A stretch of 63,799 nt of DNA, counting the filler, from Platydemus manokwari (taxonomy: Eukaryota), in assembly GCA_037951405.1 (NCBI GenBank). It is 5 parts of 5 records of this genome, joined end to end, with 100 filler letters (N's around TTAATTAATTAA, not from the genome) between each part and the next. Parts side by side here need not be neighbours in the genome. Positions count along the whole stretch, not along the records: positions 51,623 to 63,799 come from JBBMOY010271115.1; 4 more parts are not named here. One strand, 5' to 3'. This document shows positions 57,117 to 57,789 of this stretch, piece by piece; the first letter of the stretch is position 1, and the number at the start of each line of letters is the position of its first letter. The position numbers and the translations under genes were made by a program. The notes beneath the pieces were generated by a model. It was not told the origin of the DNA and made no database searches. It saw nothing but the letters and a program-made list of their open reading frames with translations.

Positions 57117-57789
57117 AGTGAGATATTTTATATGAATTAAATTTCAATTTATTTCAAAACAATTTTAATTCAGATTTTATTCAGATTTAATTTTAGTTTT
57201 ATAAAAAATTAAATTAATGTAAAATTAGAAATATTTGTTGAAATATTTGGATTTAAAATAGATTGATTGTGTCTTGACTATTTTTAGTTTGATTTTAATA
57301 TGTGGTTTTTAAAATAGTAGCGGCAAATATGGTGACCACGCATCTGGAATCGAGCCTGAAAAGATCAACGACAGTAAATTATAAAAGAAAATTTTAGAGA
57401 AGATATAAAAGAAGATATTCAAGGAGATATAAATGAAAATATAATAGAAGATACAACAAAAGATAGATTGTAGATGAAAAAGAAGTTATTAAAAGATAGA
57501 AGAATAAGAGTTTAGTGTAATGAGAGATGATTCAAGACACAGACAATTACGAAATCAAATATTTTAAAGATGGGGGATGTGAGATATTTTATATGAATTA
57601 AATTTCAATTTAATTCAAAACAATTTTAATTCAAATTTTATTCAGATTTAATTTTAGTTTTATAAAAAATTAAATTAATGTAAAATTAGAAATATTTGTT
57701 TAAATATTTGGATTGAAAATAGATTGATTGTGTCTTGACTTTTTTAGTTTGATTTTAATATGTGGTTTTTAAAATAGTAGCGGGTAACA
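57117..57789 (+). mobile_element. Complete TRIM-like non-autonomous LTR retrotransposon (LTRs 57117-57329 and 57578-57789; 248-bp non-coding interior)
   Basis: Direct repeats of about 212 bp differing at roughly 9 positions by eye; PBS TGGTGACCACG at 57330; PPT AAAGATGGGGGA at 57566-57577; AATAA on both flanks, inside (AAT)n. Confidence 0.9.

What the first reader, a model, noticed from the sequence alone, without database searches (positions are those of the whole stretch)
57117..57789. Structurally complete 673-bp TRIM with a tRNA-Trp-like PBS and a PPT
Seen: two LTRs of about 212 bp with roughly 9 differences, PBS TGGTGACC immediately after the 5' LTR, a 248-bp A/G-rich interior with no ORF, and a PPT abutting the 3' LTR. 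Known: TGGTGACC is complementary to the 3' end of eukaryotic tRNA-Trp, used by many Ty3/Gypsy elements; TRIMs are best described in plants, with fewer animal examples. The PBS region reverse-complements to GGCTCGATTCC...GGTCACCA, loosely like a tRNA T-arm plus acceptor, though about 2 nt too long. The ORF track cannot reveal this element.
Basis: partly seen in the sequence, partly recalled or inferred. Interest (0 to 1): 0.75.

Follow-up and report, generated by a model that had tools for sequence, protein, structure and literature searches.

The report
Miniature LTR retroelement in AAT repeats
This is a real 673-bp gene-less LTR retrotransposon of the TRIM type in an AT-rich animal-like genome, an ordinary kind of element whose one unusual trait is that its relatives nearby also sit inside AAT microsatellites.

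Summary
Two direct repeats (57117-57325 and 57578-57789, 209 and 212 bp) differ by 5 substitutions and two indels (K about 0.024). They enclose a 252-bp, 69% purine interior with no ORF. TGGTGACC lies 4 nt after the 5' repeat's CA. AAAGATGGGGGA abuts the 3' repeat and holds the only G5 run on the + strand of the 12-kb piece. The unit sits in an (AAT)n array with a possible 5-bp duplication, AATAA.

New here: the piece holds at least three more copies of the same repeat with the same TG...ACA ends (53366-53501, 53540-53683 inverted, 62900-63174), plus fragments. So the repeats are true LTRs of a multi-copy family. Three of the insertions lie inside AAT microsatellites, which make up about 1.4% of the piece.

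The 8-nt PBS matches the honeybee tRNA-Trp 3' end printed in PMC10886601, but diverges after that. An 11-nt box just downstream could pair with a canonical tRNA T-arm, yet no tRNA model scores there.

Not testable here: whether other copies share the interior, and the host's own tRNAs.

Verdict: a new member of a known kind (animal TRIMs are published). Moderate interest.

The parts
57090..57116 (.). (TAA)9 microsatellite forming the 5' flank. Its last 5 nt (57112-57116, AATAA) are the candidate left target-site duplication.
   Evidence: TRF; sequence; flank score 1.0 for (AAT)n.
57117..57325 (+). 5' LTR, 209 bp, ending in CA. Its first base is A where the other copies have T, and it is 4 nt shorter near its 3' end than the 3' LTR and the solo copy.
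57326..57329 (+). 4-nt spacer AATA between the LTR's CA and the PBS.
   Evidence: Spacers of 0-6 nt are shown for curated elements in PMC10886601 Fig. S2.
57330..57340 (+). Primer-binding-site candidate TGGTGACCACG. The 8-nt core at 57330-57337 is complementary to the 3' end of animal tRNA-Trp-CCA.
   Evidence: 2 occurrences, 0.03 expected. (A. mellifera tRNA-Trp 3' end as printed in the paper).
57346..57356 (+). GGAATCGAGCC. Its reverse complement, GGCTCGATTCC, is one mismatch from the tRNA T-arm/B-box motif GGTTCGANNCC. As RNA it could pair with a canonical T-arm using one G-U pair.
   Evidence: It is the only such match on either strand of the 12,177-nt piece. The 27-nt patch 57330-57356 is 59% GC against 21% for the element. 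No tRNA model hit.
57380..57465 (+). 12/24-nt purine-rich tandem repeat inside the non-coding interior (the interior is 57326-57577).
   Evidence: No ORF above 37 aa.
57566..57577 (+). Polypurine tract AAAGATGGGGGA, directly abutting the 3' LTR.
   Evidence: The only GGGGG on the + strand of the piece is at 57572.
57578..57789 (+). 3' LTR, 212 bp, with TG...CA ends.
57790..57794 (.). Candidate right target-site duplication AATAA, the start of a short (AAT)4 run.
   Evidence: Only duplication lengths of 2, 5, 8... fit the phase of the repeat (my reading of the sequence).
53366..53501 (+). Solo LTR of the same family. It is 88% identical to the LTRs over 132 nt, its first 31 nt are identical to them, and it lacks an internal segment. 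Ends are TG...CTAACA. It is flanked by (AAT)18 on the left and an AAT-like run on the right, with no PBS after it.
53540..53683 (-). Diverged solo LTR (subfamily B) in inverted orientation within the same AAT array. It has the same termini: TGTGAGG... at the start and ...GTAGCGGCTTACA at the end.
62900..63174 (+). Second subfamily-B LTR copy, 75-78% identical to 53540-53683. A 17-nt tandem expansion at 62935-63084 lies inside it, and an AAT-like array lies just upstream.
52252..52350 (+). Probable truncated, diverged LTR 3' part, ending AAAATAGTAGCGACATACA. Its start is uncertain.
62685..62858 (+). Possible further LTR-like unit (TGTGAGAT...AAACA), followed by an AAT array. It has a 68% relative at 59616-59800 (-). 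Its kinship to the family is uncertain.

Best explanation
[quoted passage not shown] The inferred life cycle is as follows. It was transcribed from its LTR and reverse-transcribed by the enzymes of an unseen autonomous LTR element. Minus-strand synthesis was primed by a host tRNA annealed to the PBS (Trp-like by its 8-nt core), and plus-strand synthesis was primed at the purine tract. An integrase recognising the TG...CA ends then inserted it into an (AAT)n microsatellite, probably with a 5-bp duplication. Since insertion the two LTRs have diverged by about 2.4%. What is shown here: the anatomy, the multi-copy LTR family with conserved termini, and the AAT-array context. What is inferred: trans-mobilisation, the identity of the primer, and whether AAT arrays are an active target.
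For: - LTR pair: 97.6% identical over 206 nt, E 7e-98; 5 substitutions and 2 indels, K=0.024.
- Independent copies of the same ~210-nt unit end at the same termini as the direct repeats: 53366-53501, 53540-53683 (-), 62900-63174, and a fragment ending at 52350. The 19-nt LTR 3' end has 5 matches at <=3 mismatches against 0 expected.
- The outer flanks of the composite are (AAT)n while the inner flanks are not (scores 1.0 and 0.71 against 0.43 and 0.43). So LTR-interior-LTR inserted as one unit.
- PBS core TGGTGACC lies 4 nt after the CA (0.03 expected in the piece). It matches the A. mellifera tRNA-Trp 3' end printed in PMC10886601. Published hymenopteran TRIMs show PBS matches of only 8-10 nt.
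- The only + strand G5 run of the piece ends 1 nt before the 3' LTR.
- No ORF above 37 aa in the element. No RT, integrase or gag domain in any ORF of 50 aa or more in the piece.
Against: - No second copy of the interior exists in the 12 kb, so propagation as a TRIM family is unproven.
- The host tRNA set is unknown, and complementarity to tRNA-Trp stops after 8 nt (10 of the first 11).
- The target-site duplication lies in a microsatellite and carries little information.
- The 5' LTR begins AG, not TG.
- No autonomous partner was seen.
- Scans of metagenome and viral collections found no relatives.
Confidence: 0.75

Rival explanations
1. A one-off internal-deletion derivative of a larger LTR element (autonomous or LARD-like) of this LTR family. 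It keeps the leader and the region next to the PPT. On this reading it is not a member of a propagating TRIM family.
For: The interior is unique within the piece, while the LTR occurs at least five times. In the piece, solo LTRs outnumber the single complete element.
Against: The interior shows no coding remnant. It carries a 12/24-nt tandem repeat typical of non-coding TRIM interiors. At 673 bp, its size and layout match published TRIMs (PbTRIM 480-781 bp). Twelve kilobases is far too small a sample to judge how many copies of the interior exist.
Confidence: 0.2
2. Not an LTR element. Either two separate insertions of a ~210-bp dispersed repeat into one locus (for example a SINE-like passenger of a TAA-repeat-specific non-LTR element such as Dong), or a partial tandem duplication of period 461. 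The PBS- and PPT-like motifs would then be chance.
For: Every clear copy is associated with (AAT)n. TAA-microsatellite targeting is so far documented for the non-LTR Dong elements (PMC3812793). One copy (ending at 52350) looks 5'-truncated.
Against: The inner flanks of the two repeats are not AAT. All copies have TG...ACA ends, which are the marks of integrase processing. The unique G5 purine tract, the TGG-initiated GC-rich patch and the only B-box-like motif of the piece all fall at the positions an LTR element predicts. TRF reports no period-461 array beyond the pair.
Confidence: 0.05

Closest known systems
[quoted passage not shown]
   Same: An animal TRIM of 480-781 bp with LTRs of 152-184 bp, TG..CA ends, PBS and PPT, a non-coding interior, abundant solo LTRs, and a preference for AT-rich targets.
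   Different: PbTRIM makes 4-bp duplications (commonly ATAT) and has a tRNA-Leu PBS. Here the phase of the flanks fits 5 bp (AATAA), the PBS core is Trp-like, and the targets are AAT arrays. Sequence similarity could not be tested because no PbTRIM sequence was in hand.
Helenus (TRIMs with a tRNA-derived sequence in the LTR; Kojima 2024, PMC10886601)
   Same: Small animal, fungal and plant TRIMs. Some hymenopteran families use a tRNA-Trp PBS starting TGGTGACCC. Both involve tRNA-like sequence.
   Different: Helenus carries the tRNA-like part, with A and B boxes, inside the LTR in sense orientation. Here no tRNA-like sequence is detected in the LTR. The T-arm-like motif is antisense, in the interior next to the PBS. 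No string of this element occurs in the Helenus sequence supplement.
Extended primer complementarity of yeast Ty1/Ty3 (regions beyond the PBS that pair with the T and D arms of the primer tRNA). From my own knowledge; not checked in a paper here.
   Same: A short 3'-end PBS plus a nearby box that could pair with the primer's T-arm.
   Different: Here the pairing is only a sequence inference. It needs a 2-nt bulge, and the box fits the generic GGTTCGATTCC T-arm rather than the T-arm of animal tRNA-Trp.
Dong, a TAA-microsatellite-specific non-LTR retrotransposon (PMC3812793)
   Same: Insertions embedded in (TAA/AAT)n arrays.
   Different: Dong is a non-LTR element that integrates by target-primed reverse transcription and has no LTRs, PBS or PPT. 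This element has all three.

Membership tests
TRIM (terminal-repeat retrotransposon in miniature) | Two terminal direct repeats of roughly 100-250 bp, with a total length under about 1 kb | tested here: met
   LTRs of 209 and 212 bp; whole element 673 bp.
TRIM (terminal-repeat retrotransposon in miniature) | LTR termini 5'-TG...CA-3' | tested here: met
   The 3' LTR and all solo copies run TGTGAG...ACA. The 5' LTR has A at its first base.
TRIM (terminal-repeat retrotransposon in miniature) | PBS complementary to a host tRNA just downstream of the 5' LTR | tested here: inconclusive
   There are 8 contiguous nt against the A. mellifera tRNA-Trp printed in PMC10886601, located 4 nt after the CA. 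The host's own tRNAs are not available.
TRIM (terminal-repeat retrotransposon in miniature) | Polypurine tract immediately upstream of the 3' LTR | tested here: met
   AAAGATGGGGGA at 57566-57577, holding the unique G5 run of the piece.
TRIM (terminal-repeat retrotransposon in miniature) | No coding capacity in the internal domain | tested here: met
   The longest ORF is 37 aa. The interior is 252 bp and includes a tandem repeat.
TRIM (terminal-repeat retrotransposon in miniature) | Target-site duplication flanking the element | tested here: inconclusive
   AATAA is present on both sides, but inside an (AAT)n array, so a match is expected by chance.
TRIM (terminal-repeat retrotransposon in miniature) | A multi-copy family whose members share the interior (mobility as a miniature element) | not testable with these tools
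   Only LTR copies recur in the 12-kb piece. The metagenome and viral scans found nothing.
Helenus / TRIMp3 | tRNA-derived (or 5S-derived, as in Cassandra/Ajax) sequence with pol III boxes inside the LTR | tested here: not met
   ARAGORN finds nothing. Rfam finds nothing at E<=1 over the piece or at E<=10 around the PBS.
Dong-type TAA-specific non-LTR element or its SINE | No LTRs; every copy flanked by the TAA target on both sides | tested here: not met
   The inner flanks of the two repeats are PBS and PPT, not AAT. TG..CA ends are conserved.

The most novel reading that the evidence does not exclude
The LTR family, and therefore the integrase of its unseen autonomous partner, specifically targets (AAT)n microsatellites. 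From the review I read (PMC3812793) and my own knowledge, that niche is documented for non-LTR elements such as Dong. I did not search for LTR precedents. In addition, the element may use a bipartite primer site, an 8-11-nt PBS plus a box complementary to the tRNA T-arm.
Probability: 0.3. Interest if true: 0.55.

Novelty: new member of a known kind. Interest (0 to 1): 0.35.

Why it matters
As a TRIM it adds one more animal example to a class already described in ants, wasps, bivalves, tapeworms and fish. It is useful for repeat annotation, because ORF-based methods miss it, and as a dating marker.

The more interesting point is the insertion context. The complete element and two solo LTRs, three insertions in two arrays, lie inside AAT arrays that occupy about 1.4% of the piece. 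If this holds genome-wide, it would indicate an LTR-element integrase with microsatellite specificity. That would bear on how integrases choose 'safe' targets and on why AAT microsatellite markers in this species may share flanking sequence.

Tried and rejected
- **Metagenome scans:** the PBS patch gave 0 hits. The LTR 3' end gave 27 hits, all chance 20-mers in unrelated contigs of 33-70% GC with no further similarity.
- **Viral-contig scans:** the LTR 5' and 3' ends gave 0 hits.
- **RNA models:** Rfam over the whole piece and, more permissively, around the PBS found no tRNA, 5S or other family. ARAGORN found no tRNA.
- **RNA fold:** the U5-PBS region folds no better than shuffles (z = +1.2).
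- **Literature text search:** PBS strings returned only unrelated PCR primers.
- **Helenus supplement:** it shares no strings with this element.
- **Host identification through the neighbouring 256-aa ORF:** not in the protein collection, and no word-search homologue. The Atlas points to FkbM-type methyltransferases without useful taxa.
- **tRNA-Arg idea:** I considered that TGGTGACCACG might fit a tRNA-Arg acceptor end better than tRNA-Trp. This rests on memory only and I could not test it.
- **Alternative LTR boundary:** I considered an LTR ending at 57329 with a 4-bp duplication ATAA. I rejected it because every other copy diverges right after ACA.

Full report
**Scope.** Only places 51623-63799 of the window are genome; everything else is N or linker. 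All work was done inside that piece.

**Observation.** The repeat finder and a pairwise alignment show two direct repeats with start-to-start spacing of 461. The 206-nt core is 97.6% identical (blastn E 7e-98). A global alignment of 57117-57325 against 57578-57789 gives 5 substitutions, one 1-nt indel and one 4-nt indel. That is p = 0.024, Jukes-Cantor 0.024.

The 3' repeat starts TG and ends CA. The 5' repeat has A at its first base and lacks 4 nt just before its terminal CA.

TGGTGACC lies at 57330-57337, 4 nt after that CA. It occurs twice in the piece where 0.03 are expected.

The tract AAAGATGGGGGA (57566-57577) touches the TG of the 3' repeat. Its G5 run is the only one on the + strand of all 12,177 nt.

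The 252-bp interior is 69% purine. It holds a 12/24-nt tandem repeat and no ORF longer than 37 aa.

I place it at 57325, because all other copies of the repeat diverge from one another immediately after ACA.

**More copies in the same piece.** A blastn of the element against the piece found a third copy at 53366-53501. Its first 31 nt are identical to the LTR start, and 132 nt are 88% identical up to the terminal CTAACA. An internal segment is missing, and no PBS follows it.

Next to it, in inverted orientation, lies a more diverged copy (53540-53683) with the same termini. That copy has a 75-78% identical relative at 62900-63174, which has a 17-nt tandem expansion inside it.

A probable truncated 3' part ends at 52350. 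A further LTR-like unit at 62685-62858, with a relative at 59616-59800 (-), is of uncertain kinship.

The 19-nt LTR 3' end has five matches at three or fewer mismatches, where shuffles give none.

So the ~210-bp unit is a dispersed, multi-copy sequence whose ends coincide with the ends of the direct repeats. This is what solo LTRs look like, and it excludes a simple local tandem duplication.

**Insertion as one unit, and the AAT context.** The outer flanks of the composite are (TAA)9 on the left and (AAT)4 on the right. The sequences touching the inner ends of the two repeats are not AAT-like (scores 1.0 and 0.71 against 0.43 and 0.43). Hence LTR-interior-LTR entered an AAT array as a single piece.

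Given the phase of the array, only duplications of 2, 5 or 8 nt fit, so AATAA (5 bp) is the natural candidate. A match inside a microsatellite proves little, however.

The two solo copies near 53.4-53.7 kb are also embedded in AAT arrays on both sides ((AAT)18 on the left, AAT-like runs between and after them). Only 1.4% of 21-mers in the piece reach the score these flanks have.

So three insertions (the complete element and two solo LTRs) lie in two AAT arrays. That makes either a target preference for AAT arrays or a strong AT-rich bias likely. I cannot separate the two from 12 kb.

**Primer site.** The A. mellifera tRNA-Trp-CCA 3' end, as printed in Fig. S2 of PMC10886601, is complementary to the first 8 nt of the site. 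After that the match breaks down (10 of the first 11). The same figure shows that curated hymenopteran TRIMs and Gypsy elements often match their tRNA over only 8-10 nt and have spacers of 0-6 nt. This site is therefore within the accepted range.

The reverse complement of 57346-57356 is one mismatch from GGTTCGANNCC, and it is the only such site on either strand of the piece. The 27-nt patch 57330-57356 is 59% GC in an element of 21% GC.

Read as a tRNA 3' part, the patch is 2 nt too long. ARAGORN and the Rfam models score nothing there. The local RNA fold is no better than shuffles.

My reading, which is inference only, is an extended complementarity to the primer tRNA's T-arm with a 2-nt bulge. 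The alternative is a relic of read-through copying of a primer tRNA. The generic T-arm it fits is not that of animal tRNA-Trp as I remember it, so the primer's identity stays open.

**What it is not.** There is no tRNA- or 5S-like sequence in the LTR, so it is neither Helenus nor Cassandra/Ajax. None of its strings occurs in the Helenus supplement. No ORF of 50 aa or more in the piece carries a reverse transcriptase, integrase or gag domain, so the partner element is elsewhere.

**Host and neighbours.** The piece is about 26% GC. It carries a split short-chain dehydrogenase gene (60013-61035) whose last exon is closest to human L-xylulose reductase, 1pr9, at E 4e-27. This fits an AT-rich animal genome. 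The species could not be named. The element is intergenic: about 1.4 kb downstream of a 256-aa methyltransferase-like ORF and 2.2 kb upstream of the dehydrogenase gene.

**Age.** K = 0.024 between the LTRs gives T = K/2r. With rates of 1e-9 to 1.6e-8 per site per year (illustrative values recalled from memory, not checked here), that is roughly 0.8 to 12 million years. The host rate is unknown, so only the order of magnitude is meaningful. The solo copies (88% and about 65-69% identity to the LTRs) are older or belong to other subfamilies.

**What could not be done.** Exact-pattern scans of metagenome and viral contigs gave nothing related.

I wrote out no family consensus or repaired version of my own and used none.

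**Verdict.** This is a genuine LTR retroelement with complete TRIM anatomy, belonging to a locally abundant LTR family. It is a new member of a known kind, since animal TRIMs are documented in PMC3532108, PMC6934838, PMC4558846 and PMC10886601. The AAT-microsatellite context and the T-arm-complementary box are the two features worth following genome-wide.

Noticed in passing
window 54926-55696 (+): A 256-aa ORF with a hydrophobic N-terminus and a weak SAM-methyltransferase signature; all Pfam hits are below their cut-offs. The ESM Atlas places it near FkbM-family methyltransferases. The word search found no homologue, and the exact sequence is not in the protein collection.
   Followed up: partly
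window 60013-61035 (+): A short-chain dehydrogenase gene split into at least two exons. The last exon is closest to human L-xylulose reductase (1pr9, E 4e-27). This is the main clue that the host is an animal-like eukaryote.
   Followed up: partly
window 62935-63084: A 17-nt tandem repeat (about 9 copies) has expanded inside an LTR copy, a small example of minisatellite birth within an LTR.
   Followed up: no
window 53312-53714: Two LTR copies of different subfamilies sit head to head inside one long AAT array: (AAT)18, LTR(+), an AAT-like run, LTR(-), (AAT)n. This suggests repeated hits on the same microsatellite.
   Followed up: partly
window 62685-62858 (+) and 59616-59800 (-): A pair of ~175-185-nt AT-rich repeats, 68% identical. 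One starts TGTGAGAT and ends AAACA next to an AAT array. They may be a third LTR subfamily or an unrelated repeat.
   Followed up: no
window 61913-62167 (-): An 84-aa acidic ORF with no Pfam match. It might be an exon or a remnant of a transposase-derived gene; this is a guess from its sequence only.
   Followed up: no
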